A stretch of 64,000 nt of DNA. Origin: Salpingoeca rosetta (Eukaryota; Protista; Choanoflagellata). The stretch spans positions 1,350,132 through 1,414,131 of the forward strand of contig JAWQFM010000010.1 of the NCBI GenBank assembly GCA_033442325.1, given 5' to 3'. Every line of letters starts with the position of its first letter. Within the stretch, counting starts at the first letter, position 1. A model generated the notes under the pieces. The model ran no database searches. It saw only the letters and a program-made list of their open reading frames with translations, and was not told the origin of the DNA. Of this stretch, positions 59,887 to 64,000 are shown in pieces. The translations under genes and the position numbers were made by a program.

Positions 59887-60399
59887 TGTGTGTGTGTCTG
59901 TGTGTGTGTCAGTGTGTCAGTGTGTGTGTGTGTGTTAGTGTGTGTGTGTGCGTATGCGTGTGTGTCACCTCAGCACCTCTCTCTGTCTGCGTTCATTGCA
60001 GCGTTGTTTTGTTTGCTTTCAGGGTGCTATGTCGTGCAGTGCCGCCTCCCACCCTCACTCCCACACGTTTGCGTCTGCGTGCATTCAGGCCGCTTCAACG
60101 GCGCCCATTTCCCTAAACTCTTTCTGGAGGCCAATAGCCCAGGCCGGAGGTTTTACTCCTTCAAGTTCAAGCCGGGCCAGGACTTGTGCATCCGTGATGT
60201 GTGGACCGCGTTTGAGGCGCAAGGCATCCAGTTTGTGCCTGGCGAGAGCGATGTGGGCGTGTTTCCCATTGTGTACCTGCGCGGACTTGCCGCCCTCTTC
60301 ATTGCCATTGCGGAGACGGACGAGGAAGCACACGCCCTTCATCTTCGCGCCGTGGCGTGCCTGACGCAGCTGCAAGATGCTTCTGGCGCTCCTGCTTGA
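55765..60399 (+). CDS. Internally duplicated pre-ATP-grasp/ATP-grasp protein (degenerate N-terminal copy, intact-looking C-terminal copy), about 9 exons
   Basis: C-terminal copy has RVARGFTC, AVIKPVFGAAGEGIVFV, LEEF, GPGGFDFL..LTDVNTG/RFNG, i.e. ATP-grasp ligase motifs. N-terminal exons align segment by segment to the same module. Confidence 0.8.
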
Positions 60400-60426
60400 C
60401 ATTGTGTGTGTGTGTGTTGTGTGTGT

Positions 60427-60481
<55 letters not shown>

Positions 60482-60779
60482 TCTGTGTGTCTGTGTGTCT
60501 GTGTGTGTGATTGCGGATTGAAGAGAGAACTGCAGTTGATTGTGGGCGGGTGTAATGACCGCGGGCGACACGCAGAACGAGGTTTGAACTGCGCACGACC
60601 GCGGTCTGCGCACCCATCGAATCGCAAAAAGAAAAAAAAACGGGGGGAAGAAGGATAATCACCAGAGCAAGCAATGAAGGAGAGAAGGAGAGGCGACAAA
60701 GCAAGCAAGCAAGCAAGCAGACAACGAATGGCCAGGCACGCGAATCGCACGGCCAGCAAGAGAGCAAGAGGACGACGGC

Positions 60780-60975
60780 ATGGAACACGCATCATTGTTA
60801 TCATATCCAGCGCACGAACAGATGAGCGGAGAGACAATGAAGAGGGCGAAGGCGAGGGCAAGAGCAAGGCGGACGCCAGCACGCGGGAGACATCCGTTCC
60901 GGCGCAGTTCCACGAGTTTGTTGGTTGGAGCGTCCAGAGTCATGGAACGGTGCGAGTCGCAGTCCGTTCAACCAG
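60780..60975 (+). CDS. Possible first exon of an unidentified gene running into the gap (start and frame uncertain; ATG at 60674 is an alternative)
   Basis: GC-rich open frames ending at CAG|GTGCGT followed by a GT-rich tract, like other 5' splice sites in this window. No recognisable motif. Confidence 0.35.
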
Positions 60976-61524
60976 GTGCGTCGTGTATGTGTGCGTGTGC
61001 ATGTGTGTNNNNNNNNNNNNNNNNNNNNNNNNNNNNNNNNNNNNNNNNNNNNNNNNNNNNNNNNNNNNNNNNNNNNNNNNNNNNNNNNNNNNNNNNNNNN
61101 NNNNNNNNNNNNNNNNNNNNNNNNNNNNNNNNNNNNNNNNNNNNNNNNNNNNNNNNNNNNNNNNNNNNNNNNNNNNNNNNNNNNNNNNNNNNNNNNNNNN
61201 NNNNNNNNNNNNNNNNNNNNNNNNNNNNNNNNNNNNNNNNNNNNNNNNNNNNNNNNNNNNNNNNNNNNNNNNNNNNNNNNNNNNNNNNNNNNNNNNNNNN
61301 NNNNNNNNNNNNNNNNNNNNNNNNNNNNNNNNNNNNNNNNNNNNNNNNNNNNNNNNNNNNNNNNNNNNNNNNNNNNNNNNNNNNNNNNNNNNNNNNNNNN
61401 NNNNNNNNNNNNNNNNNNNNNNNNNNNNNNNNNNNNNNNNNNNNNNNNNNNNNNNNNNNNNNNNNNNNNNNNNNNNNNNNNNNNNNNNNNNNNNNNNNNN
61501 NNNNNNNNNNNNNNNNNNNNNNNN

Positions 61525-61728
61525 ACATGCGCACACACGCATATCTCGCACCCTCTTTTCACATACATGGGCACACACACAACCACCCATATTCCGCACC
61601 CTTTCTCACATACATGCGCACACACACAACCACCCATATCCGCACCCTCTTCTCACATACATGCGCACACACACAACCACGCACATCCGCACCCTCTTCT
61701 CACATACATGCGCACACACACACAACCA
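61525..61728. repeat. 47-bp minisatellite (about 4+ copies) in a Fanzor intron
   Basis: Unit acatacatgcgcacacacacaaccacccatatccgcaccctcttctc starts at 61561, 61608, 61655 and 61702, with a partial degenerate copy at the gap edge. Confidence 0.85.
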
Positions 61729-61747
61729 TGCACATTCATGCACATAC

Positions 61748-64000
61748 CTCGTTTGCTCGTCAATGCGGTTTGGCCAGGCACAGCAGAGGGAATACTTTGT
61801 CGTCCTGAACTCCTCCACAATTTTTGTGTCGACCCGGCAGCCGATGGCGCGGCGTAGCTCCAGGATGGGAGCCTTTGTCCCTCCGCCGCGACCCTTATGG
61901 ACGCTGGGAGCAGGAGGCAAGAGAGGCAAGAGGCGAGTTCAGTTGGGCTTTTGTCGGTGTGGCGTGACCGTTGGATGTGGGCAAGGGTGCATTGTTGTGC
62001 GTGTGTATGTGTGTGCGTGTGTGTGTGTGTGTGCTTACCAGTCTCCGAAGAACACCCGACAGTCGCGTCCAAAGCGTGTCGCAAGCTCGCCGGCGACTCT
62101 GCTTCGGAAGCGACAGTGCTTCAGCTTCTCATGAAGCCTCCACTTCAACTCTCGCCTGCTCACACCTTCCCTCAAACACTCCCTCGCAGACGCAACCACA
62201 TCGTCCACGCTCCCTGGCTCCGCACCCCCGCCCTGCTCTTCCCNNNNNNNNNNNNNNNNNNNNNNNNNNNNNNNNNNNNNNNNNNNNNNNNNNNNNNNNN
62301 NNNNNNNNNNNNNNNNNNNNNNNNNNNNNNNNNNNNNNNNNNNCGCTCTTCCTCTCCCTTGTCCCTGCCTTCCTGCCCCTCTCCCTTGTCCCTGCCTCCC
62401 TGCTCCTCCTGCTGCTGTCGTCTCAGCTGCTCCTCCTTCTCAATCCGTGCCTTCTCTTTCCTGCGCCTGCTCCTCTCCCTCTTCGTCCGCTTGCCCCGCT
62501 CCCTCTTCTTCCTGCGTGACCCCGTCTCCCCCTTCCCCATCGCCCCTCCCTGCTCCCCACCCTCGTCGCTACCCCCTGACCTTGCTGGCACTGTCGCCGT
62601 TGGCTTGTGGTGTCGCCGTCCCCGCCCCGTATAAAGCTGGTTCACTATTCGCTTCTGCGACACCATCATTTTTTTGCCGTCTTGGATCCGAACGCAGGCA
62701 AGCGGGATGCGGGTGCCTGGGTCGACCCCAACCACGGGTGTGATGGGGCTGGTGTCGCAGACGGTGTCGCGGCGCGCGCTGGGCTCCACCAGGAGGTATG
62801 CTGTGTAGCCGTCCGTCCTGATGGACGTGACGCGACGCTTCCGGAACTGCCTGGCCACGTCTGCTCCGAGGAAATCGAGGAGGGACAGAGCTTGCCTTGG
62901 CGGTGGTCGCACTGCGGCAGGCTGTCGGCACTGGCGCTGGGAGTGGCCGAGGCGGCCACACTTGAAGCAGGTCAGGTCCCGTAGTAGTCCTGCGTCTAGT
63001 TGTATGAAAGGGTGCTTGTTTGTGAATGTGGGGAATATCTTGAGCGAGGTCAAGTCGGTGTCGGGCGGTGCAAGGGTCCTCGCAAGATGCTGCGCGGCGC
63101 CGATGTAGAGGGCCAGCTCGGCCGTGTGCTCACATGCGAAGCGCGCGCCTTCGTCATGGTGCTCCGCCACCTTCTTTAGTTGCCGTTGAGCAGCTCTCGC
63201 CTTGTTCTTGAGATCCCGTTGGAGGAGCGGGGTGAACTCCTTGGACGCCAGGTTCAGCAGCTTGTATGCCTAAGTGGTGAGGATGAGCACATGCATGCGC
63301 GCGTGTGAGTTGGTTGTGTGTGCGTGTGTATGAGTTGGTTGTGTGTGTCGCGTTGGTCGAGCGGGGACACACACCGCGATGCATGATGTAGCAACAGCAG
63401 GCATGGGAGTAGGGTCATCAAGCAGACAAGGCAAACACGCAAGCATGCGCACAGACATACCATGGTGGCCGTCATCCATTTCGGTGGGTCCGGTATCCCC
63501 ACGCCGTGCTGTCGGAGGATTGACAGCATCGGATGCTGGCTATGTTTTTTGTGGTTGCGCAGTGTGGTGAAGAGGTTGCTTAGCTTGTCTGCTGTCAGCT
63601 GTGGCGCCAAGTGCTGGAAGCAGTAGGCAGGTCTTGGGGATTTGCCTGTGGCTGCTGCTGTGACTGTTGTTGCAGTGGCGGGCGGTGTTGTTGCTGCGGC
63701 TGCTGTTGCTGTGGCTGCTGTTGTTGCTGCTGCACCTTTTGCCCTCTTGCACGGGTTGTCAGACGGCGACGCCGCTCGGGACTTCTTGTGGTCCTTCTTC
63801 TTCTTCTTCTTCTTGAGGTCCTCGACGCCTTCGGCACGCTCCTGGGCCTCGCGGAAGGCGACCTTGCGCTCCACAATTTCCTTTCTTGTGGTCTGGGCGA
63901 GGTCCGCCAGAGTGGAGAGGATTTCCCGGTGGTGTTGTTCCGCAGTGCGCAGAATGTGCAGGTAGAGTGCCGTGGTTGCAGTGCACTTCATCTGCCCAGC
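61748..64000 (-). CDS. Fanzor1 / TnpB-like RuvC RNA-guided nuclease, intron-containing, partial at both ends
   Basis: Spliced exons >=63991-63461, 63269-62039 (with a 100-N gap) and 61903-61748 encode FPTFTNKHPFIQLD, SIRTDGY, VVGVDPG (RuvC-I D at 62721-62723), RELKWRLHEK..ELATRFGRDCRVFFGD, KAPILELRRAI and IVEEFRTTKYSLCC (RuvC-II E at 61810-61812, then the start of the Zn ribbon). Confidence 0.85.

What the first reader, a model, noticed from the sequence alone, without database searches (positions are those of the whole stretch)
61748..64000. Spliced Fanzor1 (eukaryotic TnpB-like RNA-guided endonuclease) hidden across exons and gaps
Seen: no single ORF shows it, but joining minus-strand exons at canonical junctions (ATG|GTATGT at 63461, TTAG| at 63269, TG|GTAAGC at 62039, CCAG| at 61903, AG|GTATGT at 61748) gives one protein. 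Its motifs in order are P..FIQLD, SIRTDGY, VVGVDPG, a helix ending FGRDCRVFFGD, a G-rich linker with P..LRR, and IVEEFRTTK..CC. The frame across the 100-N gap is assumed. Known: this order (TDG in the WED region, RuvC-I D, RuvC-II E followed by a Cys ribbon) is characteristic of Fanzor1/TnpB OMEGA nucleases. Inference: the first two catalytic residues are intact, there are at least three host-style introns and no stops in the visible exons, so this may be an active or domesticated RNA-guided system in a close relative of animals.
Basis: partly seen in the sequence, partly recalled or inferred. Interest (0 to 1): 0.92.

Follow-up and report, generated by a model that had tools for sequence, protein, structure and literature searches.

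The report
Known choanoflagellate Fanzor gene copy

Summary
The window is Salpingoeca rosetta, not human. Its minus strand at 61748-63529 carries exons 1-3 of a Fanzor (TnpB-like RuvC nuclease) gene, annotated as PTSG_04012.

Complete paralogues (98% identical) show what the gaps hide. The 100-N gap stands for 14 nt and stays in frame. The 516-N gap hides exon 4, which carries the second Cys pair and the RuvC-III Arg-Asp.

The family is element SAl-2 of Bao & Jurka 2013. Their right terminus lies at window 60556. I found at least four genomic copies that share this end.

Across the copies, 14 variable codons are synonymous and 7 are not, which indicates purifying selection.

The published label is Fanzor2.
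- Gly sits at the canonical RuvC-II site, 33 residues before the alternative Glu.
- Outside the zinc ribbon, profiles match only solved Fanzor1 structures.
- There is no HTH or IS607 recombinase.

Unremarked so far are a CCHC zinc knuckle in the N-terminal half and a shared block of more than 13 kb upstream. Activity, guide RNA and the integrity of this copy are untested.

The parts
60556..60570 (-). Right terminus of the SAl-2 element (last 15 nt, TGTCGCCCGCGGTCA). Similarity among all four genomic copies stops at 60556.
   Evidence: The last line of the published SAl-2 DNA occurs once in the window and once in each locus. Locus-to-locus similarity ends exactly here.
60557..60606 (-). Stem-loop of about 19 bp that ends 1 nt before the terminus. 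It is a candidate end-recognition or guide-RNA scaffold element.
   Evidence: RNA fold of the last 250 nt gives z = -2.78, with 1 of 200 shuffles as stable. It is conserved in four copies. One copy has a G-to-A change in the stem without compensation.
60556..61008 (-). Visible part of the roughly 1.5-kb non-coding 3' region between the stop codon and the right terminus. This is the expected home of the guide (omega/f) RNA.
   Evidence: It differs by 0.2-1.7% between copies, as little as the exons do. There is no Rfam match.
61009..61524 (.). Assembly gap. It hides the end of intron 3, exon 4 (second Cys pair, RuvC-III Arg-Asp, stop) and about 1 kb of the 3' region.
   Evidence: In L004 the corresponding stretch is 1107 nt, and exon 4 starts 42 nt after the point where the window's letters stop. 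Exon 4 is present in L001 and L004.
61525..61747 (-). Visible part of intron 3 (donor GTATGT), almost entirely a 47-nt minisatellite (61536-61722).
   Evidence: TRF finds 4 copies here and 9 copies of a 53-nt unit in L001.
61748..61903 (-). Exon 3. It carries the linker after the RuvC-II strand, the alternative catalytic Glu in IVEEF (Glu codon 61810-61812), the Thr-Thr motif and the first Cys pair (SLCC) of the zinc ribbon.
   Evidence: Translation. Identical in L001 and L004. Glu, Thr, Lys and Cys are invariant in the family alignment.
61904..62038 (-). Intron 2 (GTAAGC...CCAG, 135 nt).
62039..63269 (-). Exon 2. In order: helical N-terminal part, WED-like strands (FIQLD, SIRTDGY), CCHC knuckle, RuvC-I (VVGVDPG), basic/acidic low-complexity insert, helices, and the RuvC-II strand with Gly (FFGD).
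62244..62343 (.). 100-N placeholder gap inside exon 2. It stands for 14 nt in the complete paralogues, in frame.
   Evidence: It adjoins a 27-nt coding repeat at 62351-62408.
62928..62969 (-). CCHC zinc knuckle (CFKCGRLGHSQRQC) between the two WED-like motifs.
   Evidence: Pfam zf-CCHC scores 23.9 bits against a cut-off of 20.8. The best PDB sequence matches are retroviral nucleocapsid knuckles. It is absent at this place in the remote relatives.
62721..62723 (-). RuvC-I catalytic Asp codon (Asp206 of PTSG_12014).
   Evidence: It aligns with the DPG motif of relatives and of Guillardia Fanzor1.
62044..62046 (-). Gly codon at the position of the canonical RuvC-II Glu (FFGD). This is the 'rearranged' active site typical of Fanzors.
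   Evidence: Invariant Gly in alignments A1 and A2. It aligns with GNW/GDW of PpFz1 and SpuFz1. Literature basis: PMC10530073.
63270..63460 (-). Intron 1 (GTATGT...TTAG, 191 nt). It is the most divergent segment between copies.
   Evidence: 1.6-7.9% between copies.
63461..63529 (-). Exon 1 as in PTSG_12014 and SAl-2 (MLSILRQHGVGIPDPPKWMTATM).
   Evidence: Identical in four copies. The published SAl-2 DNA begins at window 63584.
63530..64000 (-). Upstream open frame used by the PTSG_04012 model (ATG at 63991). It is Lys-rich and NLS-like. Whether it belongs to the Fanzor protein is uncertain.
   Evidence: It is open in three copies. L001 has six 1-bp indels here. Models of L004 and L005 splice further exons onto it. 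The window ends at a 7.9-kb gap.

Best explanation
Window 60556 to at least 63584 (minus strand) is one copy of the Salpingoeca rosetta Fanzor element SAl-2. It holds a four-exon gene for a compact (about 485 aa) TnpB-like RuvC endonuclease, followed by a 1.5-kb non-coding tail that ends in a sharp, hairpin-bearing right terminus.

Shown here:
- Identity with the published family.
- The exon structure.
- An intact RuvC-I Asp.
- Gly at the old RuvC-II site, with the alternative Glu 33 residues on.
- The Thr-Thr and zinc-ribbon start.
- In two complete paralogues, the second Cys pair and the RuvC-III Arg-Asp.
- At least four copies with one common end and unrelated flanks.
- An excess of synonymous over non-synonymous differences between copies.

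Inferred from characterised Fanzors and TnpB (PMC10432273, PMC10530073):
- The protein binds an RNA transcribed from the 3' tail across the right end.
- It uses the flank-derived part as a guide.
- It cuts matching DNA next to a short motif, which helps the element persist or spread.

The window's copy cannot be shown to be whole, because exon 4 lies in an assembly gap. By architecture the protein is closer to Fanzor1 than to Fanzor2, despite the published Fanzor2 label.
For: Organism and family:
- 98-100% identity to S. rosetta PTSG_12014 and PTSG_04012.
- the SAl-2 protein, its DNA start and its end match.
- four loci (GL832961, GL832963 which is the window, GL832970, GL832955) end at the same terminus and are unrelated beyond it.
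- two complete 485-aa ORFs with GT..AG introns.

Superfamily membership:
- Pfam PF07282 at 25.7 bits (cut-off 26.3).
- the only remote kin in 1.8 billion representatives carry PF07282 (up to 42.7 bits).
- family profiles hit mimivirus Fanzor2 (8e-9), Parasitella Fz1 (1.6e-5), ISDra2 TnpB (2e-5) and Spizellomyces Fz1 (3.5e-4).

Fanzor1-like architecture:
- the profile without the zinc ribbon hits only PpFz1 (2.6e-4) and SpuFz1 (0.024).
- the N-terminal profile's top hit is Guillardia Fz1 (E 0.22, with the TDG and DPG motifs aligned).

Selection: one search gives 14 synonymous against 7 non-synonymous variable codons (binomial p about 1e-4).
Against: - P0001 alone finds no solved Fanzor or TnpB by phmmer, and its Pfam score is just under the cut-off.
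- The AlphaFold models were poor (pLDDT 48 and 52), and Foldseek gave nothing significant.
- The first Cys pair is S-x-C-C rather than C-x-x-C, though some relatives share this.
- No transposase lies within 10 kb in three loci, and the left end was never reached. Three copies share more than 13 kb upstream, so part of the copy number could reflect segmental duplication.
- No RNA family matches.
- Non-coding parts are as conserved as exons, so the copies are young.
- No transcript, guide-RNA or cleavage data exist.
Confidence: 0.9

Rival explanations
1. The family is a Fanzor2 (IS607-TnpB-like), as starred in Bao & Jurka 2013, and not a Fanzor1.
For: - Published label.
- Saito et al. report choanoflagellate Fanzors under Fz2.
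- Small size (485 aa) and a short TnpB-like zinc ribbon.
- The best single PDB score is to mimivirus Fanzor2 (38.5 bits).
Against: - That best score covers only the 49-residue zinc-ribbon/RuvC-III stretch, which all TnpB and Cas12 proteins share.
- SAl-2 was not in the published alignment behind the tree.
- Gly, not Pro, sits at the old RuvC-II site, with a 33-residue spacing. SpuFz1 has 36, and the Fanzor2 SAl-1 has 52 by my count from the published sequence.
- Profiles outside the ribbon hit only Fz1 structures.
- There is no HTH_OrfB_IS605 or OrfB_IS605 Pfam match.
- No serine recombinase is in any of the four loci.
Confidence: 0.3
2. The gene is a domesticated host gene rather than part of a mobile element.
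For: - Low copy number, host-style introns and purifying selection.
- No transposase next to it.
- Three copies sit in the same upstream gene context.
Against: - Four copies on four scaffolds stop at the same nucleotide with unrelated downstream flanks.
- A terminal hairpin is present.
- No close orthologue exists elsewhere. Only three remote fragments reached E below 1e-3 in 1.8 billion representatives.
- Copies differ by only 1-2%, so the spread is recent.
Confidence: 0.1
3. This particular copy is dead, with a frameshift or loss hidden in one of its two gaps, even though the family is intact.
For: - Exon 4 and 14 or more nt of exon 2 are unread.
- Both gaps abut unstable tandem repeats.
- The annotated model PTSG_04012 is clearly wrong: it skips the gap and reads into intron 2 to a stop.
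Against: - The visible 421 codons have no stop. They differ from the complete L004 copy at one residue (Met/Ile).
- The coding repeat unit is 27 nt, so copy-number change keeps the frame.
Confidence: 0.15
4. The real gene is larger. An XPG/FEN1-like nuclease gene just upstream is spliced onto the Fanzor, giving a two-nuclease fusion protein.
For: - In L004 the annotated 948-aa model runs from the XPG-like part through three linking exons into the Fanzor.
- I checked one canonical GT..AG junction among these linking exons.
- The model of L005 uses the last two linking exons as well.
- An XPG_N domain opens the upstream gene in L001.
Against: - In L001 six 1-bp indels break the link and the genes are modelled apart.
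- One linking exon shows mostly non-synonymous change.
- The remote relatives are stand-alone.
- Gene predictors often fuse neighbours.
- In the window this region is outside the letters, in a 7.9-kb gap.
Confidence: 0.12
5. It is not a Fanzor at all. It would be a CCHC (Gag-like) nucleic-acid-binding protein with chance RuvC-like motifs.
For: The only above-threshold Pfam hit in the window's own exons is zf-CCHC. The only direct PDB sequence hits are nucleocapsid knuckles.
Against: - The knuckle is 14 residues out of 485.
- There are no capsid, protease or RT domains.
- The ordered Asp ... Gly ... Glu-x-x-Thr-Thr ... Cys4 ... Arg-Asp pattern meets the published family motif.
- Profile hits to solved Fanzor, TnpB and Cas12 reach 8e-9.
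Confidence: 0.02

Closest known systems
Fanzor element SAl-2 of Salpingoeca sp. ATCC 50818 (Bao & Jurka 2013, Mob DNA 4:12, PMC3627910)
   Same: It is the same family. The published protein is the PTSG_12014 sequence (98% identical to the window's exons). The published DNA starts at window 63584 and ends at window 60556. It has four exons and only the right terminus defined.
   Different: - The paper lists 3 copies. I find at least 4 loci.
- The paper stars it as Fanzor2 without including it in the tree alignment.
- The CCHC knuckle, the terminal hairpin and the shared block of more than 13 kb upstream are not mentioned there.
Fanzor1 nucleases with solved structures (Spizellomyces punctatus 8GKH, Parasitella parasitica 9CF0, Guillardia theta 9CER)
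   Same: - Gly at the old RuvC-II site inside an FG-x-D...G-[ND]-[WC] strand.
- A short (33-36 residue) linker to the Glu-x-Arg-Thr-[ST]-Lys motif.
- A helical segment before it.
- A TDG strand and a DPG RuvC-I motif.
- Introns.
- These are the only PDB hits outside the zinc ribbon.
   Different: - It is much smaller (485 aa against roughly 640-900).
- The zinc ribbon lacks the long Fanzor1 insertion.
- A CCHC knuckle sits where relatives have another roughly 50-residue segment.
- Similarity is weak (E 1e-4 to 0.2), and no tree was built.
Fanzor2 / IS607-type TnpB (mimivirus L79, 9B0L; SAl-1 in the same genome)
   Same: Compact size, a short C4 ribbon followed by Arg-Asp, and a rearranged Glu. 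It gives the best-scoring PDB match over the ribbon (8e-9).
   Different: - No HTH or OrfB_IS605 N-terminal match.
- No serine recombinase nearby.
- Gly rather than Pro at the old RuvC-II site.
- A linker of 33 rather than about 45-52 residues.
- No similarity outside the ribbon.
Bacterial TnpB (ISDra2, 8H1J/8EXA) and Cas12f/Cas12m
   Same: The RuvC plus zinc-ribbon (TNB) core, found by profile at E 2e-5 to 1e-3. By inference, the guide RNA would be encoded at the element's right end.
   Different: The canonical RuvC-II Glu is replaced, the gene is eukaryotic with introns, and the non-coding tail between stop codon and right end is long (1.5 kb).

Membership tests
TnpB/Fanzor superfamily | RuvC-I Asp, followed 125-275 residues later by [TS][TS] (Bao & Jurka motif) | tested here: met
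   Asp206 (window 62721-62723) and Thr439-Thr440 are separated by 232 residues in the paralogue numbering. Both are visible in the window.
TnpB/Fanzor superfamily | C4 zinc ribbon followed within 5-50 residues by Arg-Asp (RuvC-III) | tested here: inconclusive
   The window shows only the first Cys pair (SLCC). The second pair (CTHC) and Arg-Asp lie in gap 61009-61524. They are present in the complete paralogues L001 and L004, which are 98-99% identical.
TnpB/Fanzor superfamily | Match to Pfam PF07282 (Cas12f1-like TNB / OrfB_Zn_ribbon) | tested here: inconclusive
   The paralogue scores 25.7 bits against a cut-off of 26.3 (E 1.3e-5). The window's pieces alone give no match. Remote relatives pass with 42.7 and 28.1 bits.
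TnpB/Fanzor superfamily | Profile similarity to experimentally solved members | tested here: met
   Family profile against PDB: mimivirus Fanzor2 8e-9, PpFz1 1.6e-5, ISDra2 TnpB 2e-5, Cas12m 2.6e-5, SpuFz1 3.5e-4.
TnpB/Fanzor superfamily | RuvC (RNase-H-like) fold | tested here: inconclusive
   The AlphaFold2 models are too poor (pLDDT 48 and 52). The Foldseek top ranks are Cas12m, Cas12f and TnpB, but at E of 0.2 or more.
TnpB/Fanzor superfamily | Guide (omega/f) RNA from the 3' end, and RNA-guided DNA cleavage | not testable with these tools
   There is only a conserved 3' tail and a terminal hairpin, and no Rfam match.
Fanzor (rearranged active site) | Canonical RuvC-II Glu replaced by Gly or Pro, with an alternative conserved Glu downstream (PMC10530073) | tested here: met
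   Gly403 in FFGD and Glu436 in IVEEF are both invariant in the family alignment.
Fanzor1 | Conserved Gly and Glu about 36 residues apart (G500/E536 of SPu-1; Bao & Jurka) | tested here: met
   The spacing is 33 residues here and 34-39 in relatives.
Fanzor1 | Similarity to Fanzor1 outside the shared zinc ribbon | tested here: met
   The pre-ribbon profile hits only PpFz1 (2.6e-4) and SpuFz1 (0.024) among 177,635 PDB sequences. The N-terminal profile's top hit is GtFz1, but at E 0.22.
Fanzor1 | Placement inside the Fanzor1 clade in a phylogeny | not tested
   No labelled Fz1 or Fz2 sequence sets could be obtained. Protein searches were exhausted.
Fanzor1 | Carried by a eukaryotic transposon (Mariner, Helitron, Sola and others) with defined ends | tested here: inconclusive
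   The right end is sharp in four copies, but the left end was not reached. A DDE_3 + CCHC transposase fragment lies about 9 kb upstream in L004 only, across a gap.
Fanzor2 | TnpB-like N-terminus (HTH_OrfB_IS605 / OrfB_IS605) | tested here: not met
   No such Pfam match even at E up to 10.
Fanzor2 | Association with an IS607-type serine recombinase (TnpA) | tested here: not met
   No resolvase-type gene or domain is listed within 10 kb in any of the four loci. Gaps leave some room.
Retroviral/retrotransposon Gag nucleocapsid | CCHC knuckle together with capsid and Pol-type domains | tested here: not met
   Only a single knuckle is present, with no other Gag or Pol domain in the protein.

The most novel reading that the evidence does not exclude
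SAl-2 and its few metagenomic relatives may be a distinct, unusually compact (about 485-500 aa) offshoot of Fanzor1. It has been mislabelled Fanzor2. In Salpingoeca it has a CCHC zinc knuckle in place of part of the recognition lobe. It is kept under purifying selection and may still be active. It rides at the 3' end of a repeat unit of more than 13 kb that also carries an XPG/FEN1-like nuclease gene, which may even be spliced to it.
Probability: 0.25. Interest if true: 0.55.

Novelty: already known. Interest (0 to 1): 0.22.

Why it matters
Fanzors are the eukaryotic RNA-guided nucleases, and choanoflagellates are the closest living relatives of animals. Even so, the presence of Fanzors in S. 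rosetta has been on record since 2013 and was restated in 2023.

What this check adds is housekeeping value:
- The public gene model PTSG_04012 is wrong. It jumps the gap and reads into an intron.
- The family has at least four copies.
- It shows purifying selection.
- Its Fanzor2 label is doubtful.

If the compact CCHC-bearing protein proved active, it would be a small, intron-bearing Fanzor1-like enzyme from a tractable model organism. That would be useful, but incremental.

Tried and rejected
Searches that led nowhere:
- Pfam and NCBIfam on the window's exon pieces gave only zf-CCHC.
- phmmer of exon 2 and of the full paralogue against PDB gave only nucleocapsid knuckles.
- An exhaustive phmmer of the C-terminal 141 residues against 1.8 billion representatives gave only three remote fragments.
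- A profile search with the full-length alignment was swamped by low-complexity words. A second profile gave eight more fragments.
- A scan of viral contigs found no confirmed relative.
- Rfam found nothing in 60000-64000.
- A four-sequence pre-ribbon profile had no significant PDB hit. The ten-sequence version did.
- An N-terminal profile that included the knuckle hit only knuckles.

Structure: two AlphaFold2 runs (4 and 10 sequences) gave unusable models, so the Foldseek result is not evidence.

Repeats: a search for inverted repeats as terminal repeats found only CA/TG microsatellite noise.

Selection: I first took the exon-versus-intron contrast between two copies as selection. I discount it now. 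With four copies, intron 1 is an outlier and the non-coding tail is as conserved as the exons. The synonymous/non-synonymous count stands instead.

Haplotype or assembly duplication as the source of the copies is rejected, because the right flanks are unrelated.

Literature: no paper mentions PTSG_12014 or PTSG_04012, or a zinc knuckle in a Fanzor. The supplements of the 2023 papers that are held as text do not list Salpingoeca.
Full report
**What is in the sequence**

- Exon 1 ends at 63461 before GTATGT.
- Exon 2 runs 63269-62039.
- Exon 3 runs 61903-61748 before GTATGT.

None of the exon frames has a stop. On the window's own pieces, Pfam and NCBIfam recognise only a CCHC zinc knuckle in exon 2 (23.9 bits, cut-off 20.8). 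A direct sequence search of PDB finds only retroviral nucleocapsid knuckles. The window holds no second copy.

**Organism and annotation**

A protein search with exon 2 returned two Salpingoeca rosetta proteins. The window is therefore choanoflagellate DNA, not human.
- PTSG_04012 (P0002, 100% identical) is this locus's own gene model. It is faulty: it jumps over the 100-N gap as if it were an intron, then reads past the exon 2 donor into intron 2 and stops at TGG-TAA.
- PTSG_12014 (P0001, 98% identical) is a complete paralogue on another scaffold.

**What the gaps hide**

I fetched both loci (L001 is the paralogue, L002 is the window locus) and later two more copies (L004, L005).
- *The 100-N gap.* The window's letters stop with CG and resume with GG. 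L001 and L004 both have 14 nt in between, encoding Arg-Glu-Gln-Arg-Glu-Arg, so the frame is continuous. A 27-nt coding tandem repeat abuts the gap. That probably caused the gap, and whole repeat units would not change the frame.
- *The 516-N gap.* The window's letters stop 42 nt before the point where exon 4 begins in L004. The gap stands for about 1.1 kb. Exon 4 encodes the second Cys pair (CTHC), the RuvC-III Arg-Asp and the stop. Intron 3 is a 47-53-nt minisatellite.

The third catalytic residue is therefore present in the family but cannot be seen in this copy.

**It is already published**

A full-text search found Bao & Jurka 2013 (PMC3627910). That paper lists two Fanzor families in Salpingoeca sp. 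ATCC 50818.
- The protein given there for SAl-2 is the PTSG_12014 sequence.
- Its DNA starts at window 63584.
- Its last 15 nt (TGTCGCCCGCGGTCA) lie at window 60556-60570.
- The table gives 3 copies, only the right terminus defined, four exons, and a star meaning Fanzor2.
- SAl-2 is absent from the alignment behind their tree.

The 2023 papers that showed Fanzors to be RNA-guided nucleases also mention choanoflagellate Fanzors.

**Is it really a TnpB/Fanzor?**
- The paralogue matches Pfam PF07282 at 25.7 bits, just under the 26.3 cut-off.
- An exhaustive HMMER search of the C-terminal 141 residues against 1.8 billion representatives found only three remote relatives. All are metagenomic fragments and all have PF07282 hits; two of the three pass the cut-off.
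- A profile search added eight more fragments, including a 496-aa one with the same layout.
- Profiles of this small family hit solved structures: mimivirus Fanzor2 8e-9, Parasitella Fanzor1 1.6e-5, ISDra2 TnpB 2e-5, Cas12m and Spizellomyces Fanzor1 3.5e-4.
- The ordered pattern meets the published defining motif. It runs Asp206, Gly403, Glu436, Thr439-Thr440, Cys pairs, Arg470-Asp471.
- The Gly plus downstream Glu is the 'rearranged' Fanzor active site. Jiang et al. showed that Glu to be essential in ApmFz2.

Structure prediction failed for lack of depth (pLDDT 48 and 52), so Foldseek says nothing.

**Fanzor1 or Fanzor2?**

The best single PDB score is to a Fanzor2. It covers only the 49-residue zinc ribbon that every TnpB and Cas12 shares. 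Several tests point the other way:
- Alignments to the three solved Fanzor1 proteins run through the helical segment and the FG-x-D...G-[ND]-[WC] strand.
- A ten-sequence profile with the ribbon removed hit only two PDB sequences below E 0.1, Parasitella Fz1 (2.6e-4) and Spizellomyces Fz1 (0.024).
- The top hit of an N-terminal profile was Guillardia Fz1, with the TDG strand and DPG motif aligned, but at E 0.22.
- The Gly-to-Glu spacing is 33 residues. It is 34-39 in relatives, 36 in SPu-1, and 52 in the Fanzor2 SAl-1 by my count from the published sequence.
- There is no HTH or OrfB_IS605 match.
- No serine recombinase lies in any locus.

No labelled tree could be built here.

**Copies, ends and selection**

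Cluster look-up revealed two longer S. rosetta gene models that contain the same protein, so there are at least four loci. All four end at the same nucleotide, with unrelated sequence beyond it. A stem-loop of about 19 bp ends 1 nt before that terminus. This is what a mobile-element end looks like, and it argues against domestication.

L001 and L004 encode complete 485-aa proteins. L004 differs from the window's visible residues at one position.

Across the copies, 14 variable codons are synonymous and 7 are non-synonymous (binomial p about 1e-4). That indicates selection on the protein.

I withdrew an earlier exon-versus-intron argument. The 1.5-kb non-coding tail is as conserved as the exons, and only intron 1 stands out.

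**Surroundings**

Three loci share more than 13 kb upstream of the Fanzor. This block holds a UTP20-like gene on the other strand and an XPG/FEN1-like gene on the same strand. In the window locus most of this lies in a 7.9-kb gap that starts right after position 64000.

The left end of the repeated unit was not reached.

In L004 the annotated model splices the XPG-like gene to the Fanzor through three small exons. In L001 six 1-bp indels break that frame. Only transcripts can say whether the fusion is real.

**Mechanism, as far as supported**

- *Shown:* a selected, intron-bearing RuvC/zinc-ribbon gene sits at the right end of a multi-copy unit with a defined hairpin terminus.
- *Inferred from characterised Fanzors and TnpB:* an RNA from the 3' tail that reads across the terminus supplies scaffold and guide. 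The protein cuts matching DNA next to a short motif. This aids retention or spread of the element.
- *A guess:* the CCHC knuckle lies between the two WED-like motifs, where relatives have a different segment. No Fanzor paper mentions such a knuckle. It may add RNA or single-strand binding.

**Verdict**

It is wrong on the gene being hidden or new, and undecided on activity. The family is already known.

Noticed in passing
window 62922-62972 (minus strand): A retroviral-type CCHC zinc knuckle sits inside the Fanzor, between the FIQLD and SIRTDGY motifs. Its ligands are kept in all copies. Two copies have Cys instead of the aromatic Phe after the first Cys. The remote relatives lack it, and no Fanzor paper in the library mentions one.
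   Followed up: partly
L001:457-9530, L002:1-2103, L004:2646-11780 (outside the window, beyond position 64000): Three of the four Fanzor copies share more than 13 kb of upstream sequence (91-98% identical). It holds a UTP20-like gene on the opposite strand and an XPG/FEN1-like gene on the same strand. The left end of this repeated block was not reached.
   Followed up: partly
L004:10001-14925 (model P0030) and L001:9285-9541: The annotated model in L004 splices the XPG-like gene through three small exons into the Fanzor reading frame. I checked one of these junctions and it is a canonical GT..AG. In L001 six 1-bp indels (L001 9627-9804, equivalent to window about 63730-63905) break that frame. 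This is either a real two-nuclease fusion or a predictor artefact.
   Followed up: partly
L005:10001-13681: In the fourth copy a copia-type (rve, RVT_2) retrotransposon Pol lies just upstream of the Fanzor unit, separated by a gap. The public model fuses the two into a 1523-aa protein.
   Followed up: no
L004:3-1127: An ORF with a DDE_3 transposase domain (E 2.5e-10) and its own CCHC knuckle lies about 9 kb upstream of the Fanzor in L004, across a 1.2-kb gap. It is not seen at the matching place in L001.
   Followed up: partly
window 62039-63991 (gene model PTSG_04012): The public gene model of this locus is artefactual. It treats the 100-N gap and part of exon 2 as an intron, and it ends at TGG-TAA by reading past the exon 2 donor site.
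   Followed up: yes
window 61536-61722 and 62351-62408: Both assembly gaps in the finding abut tandem repeats. One is a 47-nt minisatellite filling intron 3 (4 copies here, 9 in L001). The other is a 27-nt in-frame coding repeat (GRDKGEGQE-like).
   Followed up: yes
window 62344-62576 (minus strand): A long Arg/Lys/Glu-rich low-complexity insert follows the RuvC-I strands and includes an NLS-like run (SRRKKRERGKRTKRERSRRRKEK). Relatives have a basic run at the same place.
   Followed up: no
window 60403-60509: A (TG)54 microsatellite begins 47 nt beyond the element's right end. The window as a whole is rich in CA/TG repeats and has seven N gaps.
   Followed up: no
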